Assembly (NCBI RefSeq): GCF_033153115.1
Contig: NW_026889753.1
Coordinates: 3,782,001 to 3,846,000 of the forward strand
Reading direction: 5' to 3'
DNA: 64,000 bases
DNA from: Saccostrea echinata
Lineage: Eukaryota
The translations under genes and the position numbers were made by a program. Each line of letters opens with the position of its first letter. Positions within the stretch are counted from its first letter, which is position 1. Shown in pieces: positions 17,956-22,814 of this stretch. Under the pieces are notes generated by a model that saw nothing but the letters and a program-made list of their open reading frames with translations, had not been told where the DNA came from and did not search any database.

Positions 17956-18675
17956 CTATTTACAAAAAAATAATAATAGATATATAAAAAATAAATAAGA
18001 TAAAAAAAAAAAAAAGAATTGAGAGTTTTATCGAAAAAGACAACTCGTCTTAAAGCCGTGTGCACATCTTGATCACAGGTACTTGACGCTTTAATTATTT
18101 CGCTTTATGTATTATAAATCAAACTATTATTATATAATAACAGTATGGAAATTTTTTATCAATAAAGAGAAATATTCAAACTTCAAGTCCTTGTGATCTT
18201 GGTGTATAACGAACAACAATCTACTGATTCACTTAGCATATTAAACATACATGTATGTCAAATGCCTTACTTTCTTGTGATTATTTTTGTAAAACAAAAA
18301 ATTAAACATATGTACTGTGATTTAAATTTTGCAAGTACTCTTTGACGTTGTATATATATATATATATTTTCTTGCCTTGAACTATATTTGCTGAAGTAAT
18401 TAAATACCAATTTTCTTAAATACAAAATATCGTTTGCTATTTGTTGTGAAATTCTGGCTTGCCAGGTTCCCAACAATGGGCAAAACAGTTTTACATTAAA
18501 GACAACTGGCAACAGAAGAAGCTAAAAGTGTTTTCTGCGACATAAAAGTTTTATTTCACAATAGTAATAGTAATTGAAACGTAATTTATGACACATTGTT
18601 TCCTTATTCCAAACTATTTTTTTTTAATTTGTTTTATATTTTTAAAGTCATTGAATGGGCCTTACAAGCACATGA

Positions 18676-20998
18676 GGGTGAATTAAAAAAAAAATATGAC
18701 CAAACGCATATTTATCAACCCACACTAAAAATACAGGCAATGAAAATAGATTTCTATGTCTCAGCATATGTCTCTAGATAGTGTCTAAATACCTGCCAAA
18801 TATCTCGTTGATAAAAGTTATGCCAAAATGATGCTAAAATTGTCAGGAGTGCAGCACCTTTTTGTGACATTTTGAAATTTCAATATTTTTTGGAGATCTG
18901 TGAAATAAAAAATAATGCTTCATGTTGAAAATAAAGACTTTCCTGATAATATTCAAAGTATTGAGCTTTAAATGTGGACTGTAGTAACTTTTGTTTAATC
19001 AGGTTGTGGTCATGGCTGATGTTTAAAAAAATGTTATACCATGTCAGGAGTGCAACAGAAAAAATGTAGTGTTGCCAAAAAAACATCAATTGTAAAGTTC
19101 TGATAGAAAATTAAGACAAAAAAGAATTTTGGAAGTGTGAAATAATAACTGATATACATTTTAAAACTTAAAAATGTTATATAAATCACAAGCAGCATTA
19201 ATGAGAGTCAAAAATATGTGCATACCCCAAAATGTCAGGAGTGCAACATTGGACATTTTGCTCCCAAGCATGAAAAAACTATTATCATTATATGATTTTC
19301 TTATTTTTATTTTGGAAAATAGAGACACAAAGAACATTTTTACCAAATAGATTTATCAATTACAGGATCTGTCTGTGCTTCAGATCCATATTTCTATAGT
19401 CAGGAGTGCAACACATTCTTTTAAAGATTCAAGTTGTGTGACGAAAAGACTTCTATTCATGCTTAGAAGTATTAATTAATTAATTAATTAATGATCTTTT
19501 TGTATAATTTAATGCTAAATTATTGACAGTTTTATTATTAAAATCCTTCCTTTTTCAATTTTATCAATTCAGATGTGTTTTTTTCTTTTTTGTGATTTTT
19601 TTTTAATGAACATTAAAAATAAACACCCTAAAACATTGTCATAAAATTCGAATAATTCCTCCTCAACTTCACTGAAACAACAGAACAAGTTCTTATGTAA
19701 TTTTCACTTCACAATTCTACTTTAAAGGTCCCAATGCTTTTGGTCAGGAGTGCAACAAATATGTTAGAATTATAAATCATCCAATAAGAATAAAAAGAAA
19801 GAAAAAATGATGAGTAGAATTTTTCTGGTGGGTTACTGTGTTTGTCTTCTAAAGGAAAATATGCTTTAAAATATATTTTATCTTCTAAATATACATTTAA
19901 GCTAGTTTTTTGGCATAAAAGATGGTATAATTCCAGATAAAATGCGAATTTTAAATACTTTCATCTGTTTTAATTATGAAGTATTGGACTATAAGTATTG
20001 CACAATTTCATTACCACTTGATGTTGCCAACACTTTATGAATTTTTGTGTTCTGTGGTTTTAATTTTAAACTTTACTGCAGTCAGGAGTGCAACAAAACT
20101 GCTTCATAATTACCGATGCTTTTTAACTATCTTTACTAAAAATTAAGTTGAAAAAAATGCTTGATACTATTTGATGTTCAAAACACTATGTCTATCAACA
20201 AATTACAGAAATTTTACAGTCAATTCAGCGAATAGTTTTCATCATTTCACATATATTTTTAATACAATTTATATATATTACACTTTGCAAATAATCATGT
20301 TTTAAGGTCTTCAAAATATGAAAAACCTGCTGTAAACGATGAAAAATATCAACACGACAAATTGATTTACAAAGTAAGAGTGGGTTATTGTGTGTCATAA
20401 TTTTTAAAACAATGTTAAATAAAATACATATCAGATGTTAGGAGTGCAACACAATAATGTAACATAGGGTCACTTCAAAATCTAGTATTTTTCGTAAGAG
20501 AACTCGTATATAACAATTCTTTTTTGGCTTAGATTTAAAGAATTAACTTGAACGGACAAGAAAGTGAATTTTGGGGAATTTTATTGCTTCATATTTTTTT
20601 CATATTAAAACTTTTCAAACCAGAATTGAAAAAATAATGTAAAATAACAATCAAAAAGCCAATTTTTTGTCACATGTGCAAGAGAAGATATTCATTCAAG
20701 GTCTAGATTTAATTATTTATACCCCTTTTACCATTTTAAAGCATAAAAAACTATAATTTCTTGTGATTATGTACTTTAGAAAGTCTTTTAAGGTGTAATG
20801 ATATTTTCTTTTTTCAAAAGAAATTTTACTAATAAAAATTCTGAAACTTTTTAATCCAATTATCTGTTCTATTGCCACTTCAGGATTTTAAACTAGAATG
20901 CATTTGCAATATGATGATATAAGTGAAAAATATGTTATAAGTAGTTGAATTTTGCCAAAAAAATTCAGTTTGGTGGTCATTTTTTTTTTAATTCACCC
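18676..20998. mobile_element. 2.3-kb non-autonomous DNA transposon, Sola2-like termini
   Basis: TIRs gggtgaattaaaaaaaaaa(t)atgacca / tggtcattttttttttaattcaccc; flanks atga / ataa suggest a 4-bp TSD with one mismatch; no long ORF. Confidence 0.7.
18842..20451 (+). repeat. Seven dispersed direct copies of 15-bp GTCAGGAGTGCAACA with unrelated spacers
   Basis: Starts at 18842, 19043, 19234, 19399, 19743, 20081, 20437; five exact, two with one mismatch. Confidence 0.95.
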
Positions 20999-22814
20999 AT
21001 AAAGTTTAAAAGAATTTTAAATTTACAGAACTCGCAGGATGCTCTGTTTTACACAGATACACTATAACAATATACAATGAACAATCTTTTTTAATCAGTT
21101 TCACAAGAAAAAATACACATAGTTGTATGATACAATGTTTCGTAAACTACAGTGAACAAACAAAAAATATAGTTTTATCTTGTTACCGAGAGATCTACTT
21201 TTAAAAGTTAACAAAAGTTGTTGTAGATTTACAACTCTCAAGTAAAGCCCAATTGTACATTTGTAATCATAACTACCAACATGATCAGTAAAAAATACAG
21301 CATATATAGTTGGTATTGAACATAGTAATCAAAGTTTTAAGATGGAAACTTTGGTTTGTGCTTAGGAACTTTGATAGCAAATCTAAATACATGTACATGT
21401 TTCCTGTGCAAAAAACTTTAAGCTTCTTTTTGTTGGTGATGTTGTAGTTTTTTTCTTTTTGTTTTTGTCTTCTGCTACGCTTTGCAAACGACCACAGCGT
21501 TGGGGAAACCCGGAGCTTTTGCATTATCACGCGATTATATAACATGTTTTTACATTGTTCGACTCATTTACTATCTGATATTTTTTAATTTACTTTATGG
21601 AATTTGCGTCAGTTGGGTTGCAAATTTGACAATTTTGTTTCAATTTTATTCCATACATATGTTTTGACATGTGTCGACCAAAAAACTATGAAAAGAGGGA
21701 AGATGGAAAATTAAGAAAGAAATCAAACTTAGACTTGCCTTGCGGCACCAACAAACGAAATAAGGGCAAAAAATGCAATCATAGTTGGAAATCTGCAAAG
21801 AAAAAAAAATCAAATTATTTCAGACCAACAAATTGGCACGATTGCCGCTCCCTCTATGATCCTAACTTCCTTTGTGAAATACAAATTAAATGTATATATC
21901 AAACAATGTTTATTCTGCTTTCGAATACAGAAAAAAATCAAGCCATACCTTATGTCTCCTATCACTATTTAATGACAAGATAAGGGGCTGAATAACCCAG
22001 ATAAATTGATAAAAAGAGTGCCTCCAGTTCAGAATGATAAATGAAAGTAATAGATAATAATTGTTTCCATTTGATTTACTGAAACAAATGTTAGAAAAAG
22101 AGGACATGTAAATAAAATGTGCAAATAATGGCATCCTAAATAATCGTTCACCTTTATCATGTAAAGGAATTAGCGCTCCTCATGTTCTATTTTCAAAAAT
22201 CCCATATATACTAAAATTAGAATGGTGAAAAGTAATGGGGTCCCTCCTGGTCACTGTGTAGAAATTCATTACTTTAAAACATTAATTTCTTGTGTATGAG
22301 AGAAATGAATATTTTTTTTATATTTGAAAACAAAATGTTTCCCGACGCAATTTCGACTGAGAGTTCAGTAAATCGTATTGGAATGCCATCTTTATTAAAA
22401 AAAAAAGAAAAAAAAGACAACTCGTGCGCATTCACATTGGGTTTCTGTAACATTGCATTAGAATTAAATTATTTATAAGTGTTCCAATAATTTTGATGTT
22501 GGACCAAGAGCTGGTCCAATATGGCTCCACTCAACATCTGATATATTGGACTTTTTACACGAAGTATTTGTTCAGTACAATATTTAAAGGGGTATAACAG
22601 ATATCATGAATGATGTTCTCAAAGTTTATCATGAAAACTCAATAACACAGGTTCTTGTACACTAGTGCATATGCACTTCTAGGTCAATATAGTCGTGATC
22701 CTAATTTTGATAAGCCCTGATCTTAAATAAAGTGGTCAATGTGAATCTTTAATGGAAAAACTGGTACATGTAATTAACTACTGTTTGGAATCCACAAAAA
22801 TAAAGGCGAATACC

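What the first reader, a model, noticed from the sequence alone, without database searches (positions are those of the whole stretch)
18842..20451. Repeat-spacer-like array: seven conserved 15-mers at nucleosome-scale periodicity inside a TIR element
Seen: GTCAGGAGTGCAACA seven times, all on the same strand, with start-to-start distances of 201, 191, 165, 344, 338 and 356 bp, i.e. about one or two units of 165-200 bp. Spacers are AT-rich and show no mutual similarity by eye, so this does not look like an ordinary satellite. The copies are internal rather than clustered at the ends like typical transposase sites. I saw no full copy of the motif elsewhere in the window. Inference: a selected protein-binding scaffold (transposase or host factor) that may phase nucleosomes, or an RNA-processing signal, carried by a mobile element.
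Basis: partly seen in the sequence, partly recalled or inferred. Interest (0 to 1): 0.82.

Follow-up and report, generated by a model that had tools for sequence, protein, structure and literature searches.

The report
Transposon with seven conserved, evenly spaced boxes
A high-copy, gene-less cut-and-paste transposon of a mussel-like animal genome carries seven identical 15-base boxes. The boxes and the distances between them are conserved between distant relatives, while the DNA in between is not, which suggests docking sites for a protein the element needs to spread.

Summary
Seven same-strand copies of GTCAGGAGTGCAACA (five exact, two with one change) lie at 18842-20451; 0.06 are expected by chance. 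They sit in a 2,323-bp ORF-less element (18676-20998) with roughly 30-nt imperfect inverted ends (outer 20 nt perfect) and a 4-bp target duplication.

- **Copy number:** the 923-Mb genome holds 4,355 exact boxes, nearly all at the same six distances, so several hundred copies.
- **Not a decayed satellite:** spacers show no mutual similarity and there are no degenerate extra boxes.
- **Boxes are selected:** variants shared between copies are about 9-fold rarer in boxes than in spacers. Private variants are only about 1.5-fold rarer.
- **Relatives:** two relatives from other organisms have spacers about 60% identical or unalignable. They keep the boxes 14-15/15 and the distances to 0-2 bp (short spacers) or 2-4% (long). 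Box 5 is inverted in both.
- **RNA readings:** no Rfam match and no consistent fold.

Best reading: cis-acting protein-binding boxes needed for the element's propagation, held one or two nucleosome lengths apart. The binding protein and the autonomous partner were not found. The scan had already noted this family elsewhere in this genome (s1-810979, s1-816237, s1-803171).

The parts
18676..20998 (+). Whole non-autonomous TIR transposon copy, 2,323 bp, with no ORF of 70 aa or more inside
   Evidence: Similarity to 28+ other genomic copies starts and stops at these bases. It is 97% identical to the majority sequence of the family. ORF list.
18672..18675 (.). Left target-site duplication, ATGA (one change from the right copy)
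   Evidence: 23 of 28 copies have perfect 4-bp duplications. No other tested length (2, 3, 5, 6 or 8 bp) fits more than 7 copies. ATAT is the most common sequence.
18676..18705 (+). Left terminal inverted repeat, GGGTGAATT + A-run + TGACCAAAC
   Evidence: Inverted-repeat pairs I5 and I20. Conserved in all 28 copies. Related termini are present in L073 and L075.
18842..18856 (+). Box 1, GTCAGGAGTGCAGCA (one change; exact in the family majority)
   Evidence: A box lies at the same distance, 180 nt from the left end, in relative L073.
19043..19057 (+). Box 2 (exact)
   Evidence: Exact in L075 and absent from L073.
19234..19248 (+). Box 3 (exact)
   Evidence: Exact in L073 and L075.
19399..19413 (+). 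Box 4 (exact)
   Evidence: Exact in L073; 14/15 in L075.
19743..19757 (+). Box 5 (exact)
   Evidence: An exact box lies at the equivalent distance in L073 and L075, but on the opposite strand.
20081..20095 (+). Box 6 (exact)
   Evidence: Exact in L075.
20437..20451 (+). Box 7, GTTAGGAGTGCAACA (one change; exact in the family majority)
   Evidence: Exact in L075.
20968..20998 (-). Right terminal inverted repeat
20999..21002 (.). Right target-site duplication, ATAA

Best explanation
The locus is one copy of a young, high-copy, non-autonomous cut-and-paste (TIR) DNA transposon. Its interior is a conserved scaffold of seven identical boxes of at least 14 bp. The boxes are held at fixed distances of about 165-200 bp or about twice that, and the DNA between them is free to change.

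I read the boxes as cis-acting sites that the element needs in order to be propagated. Most likely they are high-affinity docking sites for a sequence-specific DNA-binding protein. That protein could be the transposase or an accessory protein of a still unidentified autonomous partner, or a host factor that the machinery uses. The spacing would place every box in linker DNA between one or two nucleosomes.

Shown here: mobility, selection on the boxes at the level of propagation, conservation of the spacing, and orientation-independence of box 5. Inferred: protein binding, which protein, and the nucleosome rationale.
For: **Mobile element.** TIRs and 4-bp target duplications are present in 23/28 copies. 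The genome holds 4,355 exact boxes against 0 for the reversed control pattern. Copies are 94-96% identical to the window copy. Of 71 neighbour distances sampled, 52 match the six canonical distances and 7 match their sums.

**Not a satellite.** No spacer similarity. No degenerate extra boxes: one site with 5 or fewer mismatches, against 1.5 expected. The flanks of the seven boxes share nothing.

**Selection on the boxes.**
- In 28 young copies, substitutions are 0.68% in boxes and 1.76% in spacers (p=1e-6). This holds within G/C and within A/T sites separately.
- Variants shared by two or more copies, that is, propagated by transposition, number 1 per 105 box sites against 187 per 2,223 spacer sites (p=0.003). 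Private variants are only 0.17 against 0.25 per site (p=0.065).
- In older copies (70-88% identical), boxes that were not used to find the copy are 91.3% identical and spacers 84.4% (p=4e-5).

**Relatives from other organisms.**
- L073 has a related TIR, and its left arm and spacers are about 59-63% identical. It has exact boxes at positions equivalent to boxes 1, 3 and 4.
- L075 has all seven boxes at 14-15/15, with spacers at or below the limit of detectable similarity.

**Spacing is conserved.** Family versus L075: 201/202, 191/191, 165/165, 337/350, 338/346, 356/362, and right arm 546/539. Family versus L073: left arm 179/179 and 165/166. Dead copies inside the genome, at only 12-25% divergence, drift by a median of 7 bp. 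The cross-lineage median is 1.5 bp (Mann-Whitney p=0.006).

**Works on either strand.** Box 5 is inverted in both relatives. This fits a DNA-binding site better than a transcript signal.

**Box confined to this family.** All 12 examined hits with a non-family flanking base were still family copies.
Against: - No protein was identified and no autonomous partner with these TIRs was found.
- The boxes are unrelated to the TIR. They are spread over the interior instead of clustering near both ends, and in this genome all point one way. That is unlike classical transposase-binding subterminal repeats.
- The cross-lineage evidence rests on two single, partly truncated contigs. Both were found by requiring two exact boxes 150-180 nt apart.
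- Spacer lengths are not absolutely fixed. Spacer 5 is 338 in the young subfamily, about 357 in an older one and 346 in L075.
- The deficit of private mutations in boxes (ratio 0.67, p=0.065) leaves room for some host-level constraint.
Confidence: 0.5

Rival explanations
1. The boxes are binding sites for a host transcription factor, so the element acts as a portable enhancer or anti-silencing module. One proposal is seven metal-response elements for MTF-1. The benefit could go to the element (open chromatin at donor sites) or to nearby host genes.
For: The reverse complement of the box, TGTTGCACTCCTGAC, contains TGCACTC. This fits the MRE core TGCRCNC (consensus as given in PMC1635269). Other first-reader notes report arrays of different exact motifs at similar spacing in other transposon families of this genome, one of them RFX-like (unchecked). 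A bound factor in either orientation fits the inverted box 5.
Against: - All 14-15 positions are invariant across 19 sites in three lineages, not only the 7-bp core.
- A random 15-mer contains TGCRCNC on one strand or the other about 1% of the time, and many factor motifs could be matched after the fact.
- Private mutations in inserted copies hit boxes nearly as often as spacers, whereas propagated variants avoid them. That is selection for propagation, not for host benefit at each insertion.
- The exact box was not seen outside this family in the sample examined.
Confidence: 0.25
2. The boxes are recombination or junction sites. The interior would then be an assembly of units joined or exchanged at the 15-mer: a cassette-like array, or an array growing by unequal exchange between boxes.
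For: In run X5 (another organism label) a contig joins the end of box 3 to the sequence that follows box 1 (19248 to 18859). Depth over 18658-19294 is two- to three-fold higher than further downstream. This fits a variant with a duplicated box1-box3 block whose junction is a box. One genomic copy has boxes 4 and 5 brought together by loss of most of spacer 4.
Against: The order, number and length of units are the same in nearly all copies and in the distant relative L075. No permutations were seen. Rare box-to-box duplications or deletions are what any 15-bp direct repeats would produce passively.
Confidence: 0.07
3. The boxes act in RNA, as a processing, guide-pairing or small-RNA-related signal in a transcript of the element.
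For: All seven boxes are co-oriented in this genome. A perfect 15-nt identity would suit base pairing with a guide RNA.
Against: - No Rfam family matches at E up to 1.
- Folding z-scores around the boxes scatter around 0 on both strands, and the box is paired inconsistently.
- Box 5 is on the other strand in both relatives.
- No run on record as RNA holds the element. The runs that hold it are of unknown kind.
Confidence: 0.05
4. The array is a functionless relic of an old 165-200-bp tandem repeat, and the 15-mers survive by chance or by mutation bias.
For: Satellites of about 156-168 bp are common in this genome, including one in the window at 40389-41100 and several in flanks of other copies. 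A tandem-duplication origin would explain the co-orientation and the unit lengths.
Against: Seven 15/15 identical boxes sit in flanks with no similarity at all. The boxes are kept at 14-15/15 in relatives whose spacers are about 60% identical or unalignable. Boxes are G+C-rich in a genome where G/C sites change faster, so mutation bias works against them.
Confidence: 0.03

Closest known systems
Subterminal transposase/accessory-protein binding repeats of plant and animal TIR transposons (Ac/Ds AAACGG repeats, En/Spm TnpA 12-bp motifs, P-element internal transposase sites) - from general knowledge
   Same: Multiple copies of a short motif that differs from the TIR lie inside a TIR element. Non-autonomous derivatives keep them because they are needed in cis.
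   Different: Those motifs are 6-12 bp, degenerate, densely clustered within a few hundred bp of both ends, and in both orientations. Here the boxes are at least 14 bp and invariant, 165-356 bp apart across 1.6 kb of the interior, co-oriented in this genome, and at conserved distances.
Su(Hw) binding-site array of the gypsy retrotransposon (12 sites separated by AT-rich spacers) - from general knowledge
   Same: A mobile element carries an array of sites for one multi-zinc-finger-type DNA-binding protein, separated by AT-rich spacers that are not conserved.
   Different: The gypsy array is compact (about 350 bp, sites about 25-30 bp apart), sits in a retrotransposon, and its sites are degenerate. 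Binding here is not demonstrated.
CENP-B box in alpha-satellite DNA (17-bp box in about 171-bp monomers, often every second monomer) - from general knowledge
   Same: A 15-17-bp box recurs at one or two nucleosome lengths. The box is far better conserved than the DNA around it.
   Different: Alpha-satellite monomers remain clearly similar to each other and form megabase tandem arrays. Here the units share nothing but the box, and the array is a fixed seven-box module inside a dispersed transposon.
Bivalve MITE-like or Helentron-derived elements with an internal core of about 160-170-bp tandem repeats (pearl, DTC84 and similar) - from general knowledge
   Same: Non-autonomous mollusc elements with an internal periodic structure of about 160-200 bp. 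Such satellites are common in this genome.
   Different: Their internal repeats are recognisable tandem monomers and they lack classical TIR plus TSD ends. This element has roughly 30-nt imperfect TIRs (outer 20 nt perfect), 4-bp TSDs, and spacers with no mutual similarity.
Kolobok superfamily (TTAA target duplications, 5'-RR...YY-3' termini; PMC9587614)
   Same: 4-bp target duplication and GG...CC termini.
   Different: None of 23 perfect duplications is TTAA. There are no long terminal direct repeats as in KolobokP. No transposase is available to test membership.

Membership tests
Non-autonomous class II (TIR, cut-and-paste) DNA transposon | Terminal inverted repeats | tested here: met
   20 nt at 100%, extending imperfectly to about 30 nt, in the window copy. 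The same termini are present in 28 copies.
Non-autonomous class II (TIR, cut-and-paste) DNA transposon | Target-site duplication of fixed length flanking independent insertions | tested here: met
   23 of 28 copies have perfect 4-bp duplications, with different sequences at different loci. Other tested lengths fit 0-7 copies.
Non-autonomous class II (TIR, cut-and-paste) DNA transposon | Dispersed multi-copy family without coding capacity | tested here: met
   4,355 exact boxes on many contigs. Full-length copies lie on more than 20 contigs. No ORF of 70 aa or more lies inside 18676-20998.
Non-autonomous class II (TIR, cut-and-paste) DNA transposon | An autonomous partner with the same termini that encodes the transposase | not tested
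   No candidate was seen in the loci held. Further genome DNA could not be fetched.
Kolobok superfamily | TTAA-specific 4-bp target duplication (PMC9587614) | tested here: not met
   0 of 23 perfect duplications are TTAA. ATAT, ATAA and TTAT dominate.
Kolobok superfamily | Termini 5'-RR ... YY-3' (PMC9587614) | tested here: met
   GGG...CCC.
Sola superfamily | 4-bp target duplication (from general knowledge of the superfamily description) | tested here: met
   Group-specific termini and the DDD transposase could not be compared.
Sola superfamily | Sola-type transposase in the autonomous partner | not testable with these tools
   The element is non-coding and no partner was found.
Satellite / decayed tandem repeat | Units align to one another | tested here: not met
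   All spacer pairs have z below 4. TRF finds no long-period array at 18.8-20.5 kb, although it does find the ordinary 168-bp repeat at 40389-41100.
Array of metal-response elements (MTF-1 sites) | Core TGCRCNC (PMC1635269) | tested here: met
   The reverse complement of the box contains TGCACTC (read directly from the sequence; consensus).
Array of metal-response elements (MTF-1 sites) | Constraint limited to the core, with variable flanks, as in natural MRE clusters (from general knowledge) | tested here: not met
   All 15 positions are identical in the seven majority boxes, and 14-15/15 in 12 boxes of two relatives.
Array of metal-response elements (MTF-1 sites) | MTF-1 binding and metal-induced transcription | not testable with these tools
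   No usable expression data. The runs that hold the element are of unknown kind.
Classical subterminal transposase-binding repeats | Clustered near both ends, in both orientations | tested here: not met
   The boxes lie 180 to 1,782 nt from the left end of a 2,328-nt element, all on one strand, and 165-356 nt apart.
Structured small-RNA gene cluster (miRNA, snoRNA and similar) | Match to a known RNA family, or a stable conserved hairpin at each unit | tested here: not met
   No Rfam match at E up to 1. Folding z-scores range from -2.2 to +1.1 with inconsistent pairing of the box.
CRISPR-like repeat-spacer array | Spacers acquired individually, so they differ between arrays; structured repeats; prokaryotic context | tested here: not met
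   The spacers are the same in all copies of the element. The host is a 923-Mb animal-type genome.

The most novel reading that the evidence does not exclude
The element stands for an undescribed design of DNA transposon. In this design the interior is a 'ruler': invariant protein-docking boxes kept one or two nucleosome lengths apart, with spacer sequence free but spacer length constrained. A bound factor and phased nucleosomes would then keep all boxes accessible together and so promote mobilisation. Several unrelated transposon families of the same genome may have converged on this design with different boxes. Unchecked first-reader notes describe 13-bp, 16-bp and X-box-like arrays at about 175-bp spacing.
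Probability: 0.2. Interest if true: 0.8.

Novelty: new variant of a known kind. Interest (0 to 1): 0.6.

Why it matters
Non-autonomous DNA transposons are usually thought to need only their ends, with interiors that are neutral filler. In this family the interior holds the most conserved features of the element besides the TIRs: an invariant box of at least 14 bp and the distances between its copies, kept while the rest is substituted to near randomness.

If the boxes are docking sites at nucleosome spacing, the family gives a natural, several-hundred-copy test bed for two questions. How does chromatin organisation affect transposon mobilisation? How do sequence-specific factors phase nucleosomes? 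It would also add a new kind of cis requirement to transposon biology. The family also scatters several thousand identical high-affinity sites through a mollusc genome, which could matter for host gene regulation.

Tried and rejected
- **Known RNA families:** Rfam at permissive threshold over 17-23 kb found nothing.
- **RNA folding:** windows of 135 nt around each box, both strands, gave no consistent structure.
- **Hidden monomer homology:** TRF and pairwise spacer alignments found none. Cross-comparison of non-homologous spacers between the family and L075 also found none.
- **Dead boxes in the long spacers:** a scan for degenerate boxes in the middle of the three long spacers, to test 'double units with a dead box', found none beyond chance.
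- **Literature:** a search for the 15-mer and its sub-words returned only unrelated mouse primers. A search for similar transposon architectures returned nothing relevant.
- **Expression:** the five runs that hold the element are Logan contigs of unknown kind, and their tiny size with high depth fits low-coverage DNA. Nothing can be said about transcription.
- **Viral contigs:** no hit.
- **L074:** an unrelated G+C-rich 59-bp satellite that contains the 15-mer by chance; discarded.
- **OTU-like gene in L073:** tested as a lead to an autonomous partner. It was not found in this genome, and no right-arm homology or clear right TIR of the element was found in L073, so whether the gene belongs to the element is open.
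- **Tight box pairs or inverted box-5 arrangement in this genome:** one deletion derivative and none, respectively.
- **Autonomous partner and other motif-array families:** I did not try to obtain that DNA by another route.
- **Superfamily:** Kolobok is rejected on target sequence. Sola and others remain open.
- **Majority sequence:** a majority-rule sequence of 28 copies of this non-coding element was used inside scripts only, as a coordinate frame. It is not printed.
Full report
**1. The observation.** GTCAGGAGTGCAACA, with up to two mismatches allowed, occurs exactly seven times in the 64-kb window. All hits are on the + strand: 18842, 19043, 19234, 19399, 19743, 20081 and 20437. Five are exact and two differ at one base. 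The chance expectation is 0.06. Tandem Repeats Finder sees no long-period array in the region.

**2. The carrier is a transposon.** A perfect 20-nt inverted repeat (18676-18695 / 20979-20998), continuing imperfectly to about 30 nt, brackets the array.

- A search of the window's own genome (923 Mb, 425 contigs) with the region returned full-length matches on many contigs at 94-96% identity. All of them began and ended at window 18676 and 20998.
- In 28 extracted copies the ends are GGGTGAATT[A/C]-A-run-TGACCA ... TGGTCA-T-run-[T/G]AATTCACCC.
- 23 of the 28 copies are flanked by a perfect 4-bp duplication that differs from locus to locus. ATAT is the commonest and none is TTAA. No other tested length fits. 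The window copy has ATGA/ATAA.
- No ORF of 70 aa or more lies inside the element.
- The exact 15-mer occurs 4,355 times in the genome (1,977 forward, 2,378 reverse). The reversed control pattern occurs 0 times.
- In the first 100 places listed, 52 of 71 same-strand neighbour distances are within 6 bp of one of the six canonical distances. Seven more equal sums of adjacent ones, which means a mutated box in between.
- Hits chosen to have a flanking base never seen in the family (36 genome-wide) were still family copies in 12 of 12 cases examined.

So the box is essentially private to this family, which has several hundred copies. The copies are about 98% identical to their majority sequence, and in that majority all seven boxes are exact.

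**3. It is not a decayed satellite.** With the boxes removed, none of the six spacers (150-341 nt, GC 0.24-0.27) or the two arms aligns to another better than shuffled controls, all with z below 4. The one exception is the TIR match between the arms. A scan of the majority sequence for degenerate boxes found one site with 5 or fewer mismatches, against 1.5 expected. The twelve positions on either side of the seven boxes share nothing. The box is therefore sharply bounded. The three long spacers contain no recognisable dead box. The genome does contain ordinary 156-168-bp satellites, which the same tools detect readily.

**4. The boxes are under selection, and the selection acts on propagation.**

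- *Young copies.* Among 28 copies, substitutions are 0.68% in box columns and 1.76% elsewhere (p=1e-6). The deficit holds within G/C sites (0.9% against 2.6%) and within A/T sites (0.4% against 1.5%), so base composition does not explain it.
- *Shared versus private variants.* Variants carried by two or more copies were present in a source element and spread by transposition. They number 1 per 105 box sites against 187 per 2,223 spacer sites, a nine-fold deficit (p=0.003). Variants private to one copy are 0.17 against 0.25 per site (p=0.065). Box changes are therefore seldom propagated, whereas inserted copies decay almost neutrally.
- *Older copies.* In copies 70-88% identical to the majority, boxes other than the one used to find the copy are 91.3% identical and spacers 84.4% (p=4e-5).

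**5. Relatives from other organisms.** I scanned public collections for two boxes 150-180 nt apart.

- *L074* is an irrelevant G+C-rich 59-bp satellite.
- *L073* is a metagenome contig. On its minus strand, an exon resembling succinyl-CoA ligase alpha is followed, in what looks like an intron, by the left end of a related element, GGGTGGTTTCAAAAAAAATGAC.
  - Its left arm aligns to family positions 1-375 at 59% identity, and a second block aligns to 562-754 at 62%.
  - Exact boxes lie at element positions 180, 574 and 740 (family: 180, 572, 737). There is an extra box 24 bp after the third, and an inverted one at 1,098 (family box 5: 1,074).
  - Box 2 is absent.
- *L075* is a low-coverage contig in an assembly labelled as a SUP05-cluster bacterium, and evidently contaminating animal DNA. 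To my knowledge, this bacterial group lives in gills of deep-sea mussels.
  - It carries a relative whose left end is cut off next to a Tc1-like transposase fragment. Its right end is a related TIR.
  - All seven boxes are present: five exact and two changed only at the last base.
- *Spacing, family versus L075.* Box-to-box distances are 201/202, 191/191, 165/165, 337/350, 338/346 and 356/362. The right arm is 546/539 nt.
- *Spacer similarity.* Forced global alignments give 61-68% identity for all spacers. Spacers 4-6 are no better than shuffled sequence under either global or stringent local scoring. With stringent local scoring only spacer 1 is significant.
- *Length drift.* Dead copies inside the genome, at only 12-25% divergence, have drifted by a median of 7 bp per interval. 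The cross-lineage median is 1.5 bp (Mann-Whitney p=0.006).
- *Box 5* lies at the equivalent distance on the opposite strand in both relatives. Support for a local inversion is weak.

Two caveats apply. These are two single contigs, and each was found by requiring two exact boxes. The counts above for L075 still leave five boxes that were not used to find it, at 73/75 identical positions.

**6. What it is not.**

- *RNA.* Rfam gave nothing. Folding around the boxes gave z-scores scattered around zero and inconsistent pairing. Together with the inverted box 5, this disfavours an RNA signal.
- *Expression.* The sequencing runs that hold the element are small contig sets of unknown kind. They say nothing about expression.
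- *A variant in another organism label.* In one run a contig joins the end of box 3 to the sequence that follows box 1, and depth over that block is raised. This suggests a variant with a duplicated box1-box3 block. One genomic copy has lost most of spacer 4. Both are what 15-bp direct repeats would occasionally produce, and do not amount to evidence for a cassette system.

**7. The metal-response-element idea.** The reverse complement of the box does contain TGCACTC, which fits the core TGCRCNC (consensus from PMC1635269). There are three objections:

- The whole 14-15 bp is invariant, not only the core.
- A random 15-mer carries that core about 1% of the time.
- The pattern of shared versus private variants points to selection for propagation, not for host benefit at each insertion.

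I keep a host-factor reading as the main rival, without committing to MTF-1.

**8. Mechanism.** The best-supported statement is that the boxes are cis-acting sites required for the element to be propagated. Their mutual distances matter, while the sequence between them does not.

- *Inferred:* an invariant site of at least 14 bp that works in either orientation suggests a sequence-specific DNA-binding protein.
- *Speculation, consistent with the numbers:* the spacers are 150-186 nt or 322-341 nt, enough for one or two nucleosome cores plus linker. This suggests an arrangement that keeps all boxes in linkers.
- *Not determined:* which protein binds. No autonomous partner was identified.

**9. 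Classification.** The element is a non-autonomous TIR transposon. A 4-bp non-TTAA duplication and GG...CC termini exclude canonical Kolobok (TTAA; PMC9587614). Sola-type and other superfamilies with 4-bp duplications remain open. I do not assign a superfamily.

**10. Earlier notes of the scan.** The same family was noted at other places of this genome (s1-810979, s1-816237, s1-803171). Other transposon families with exact-motif arrays at about 175-bp spacing were also noted (s1-803491, s1-807573, s1-803115). If they hold up, this design recurs in unrelated families of this genome.

**11. Verdict.** The feature is real and is under selection. The element is an ordinary kind of thing (a non-autonomous DNA transposon), but its internal design is, to my knowledge, undescribed: conserved boxes and conserved distances with free spacers. 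Interest is moderate to high. The mechanism is inferred, not shown.

Noticed in passing
window 38905-42866: Two direct repeats of roughly 470 nt (38905-39373 and 42399-42866, 86-92% identical, 3,494 bp apart) flank an internal region that holds a 168-bp tandem repeat. The repeat is at 40389-41100, with 4.2 copies and 85% matches. The layout and repeat length recall the LTDR-INT-LTDR structure described for KolobokP elements of bivalves (PMC9587614), or a small LTR-type element.
   Followed up: partly
window 43573-43648: A perfect 24-bp tandem repeat, 3.2 copies (CTTCTTCTCTACTTACAGAATCAA).
   Followed up: no
L075 (FXLX01000078.1), whole contig: A 2.7-kb, very low-coverage contig in an assembly labelled as a SUP05-cluster bacterium is AT-rich animal-type DNA. 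It holds a Tc1-like transposase C-terminal fragment followed by a relative of the transposon studied here. This looks like host contamination of a symbiont assembly.
   Followed up: partly
L073 (VAPA010661193.1), minus strand, index about 1500-2270: Downstream of the related element lies a three-exon ORF with a weak OTU cysteine-protease match (Pfam E=0.027; DGNCYFWA motif). No counterpart was found in the window's genome. Whether it belongs to the element in that organism is open.
   Followed up: partly
window 18859-19248, as laid in run X5: In a run labelled as another organism, a contig joins the end of box 3 to the sequence that follows box 1. Depth over 18658-19294 is two- to three-fold higher than downstream. 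This suggests a common variant with a duplicated box1-box3 block.
   Followed up: no
L008-L011 (about 100-1,250), L040 (4381-5201), L027, L055: The flanks of several copies of the element contain ordinary satellites with 156- or 166-bp monomers. Such arrays seem frequent in this genome.
   Followed up: no
L074 (brine metagenome contig), minus strand, index 1-700: An unrelated G+C-rich 59-bp satellite whose monomer contains near-copies of the same 15-mer. It is a chance coincidence that produced a false hit.
   Followed up: yes
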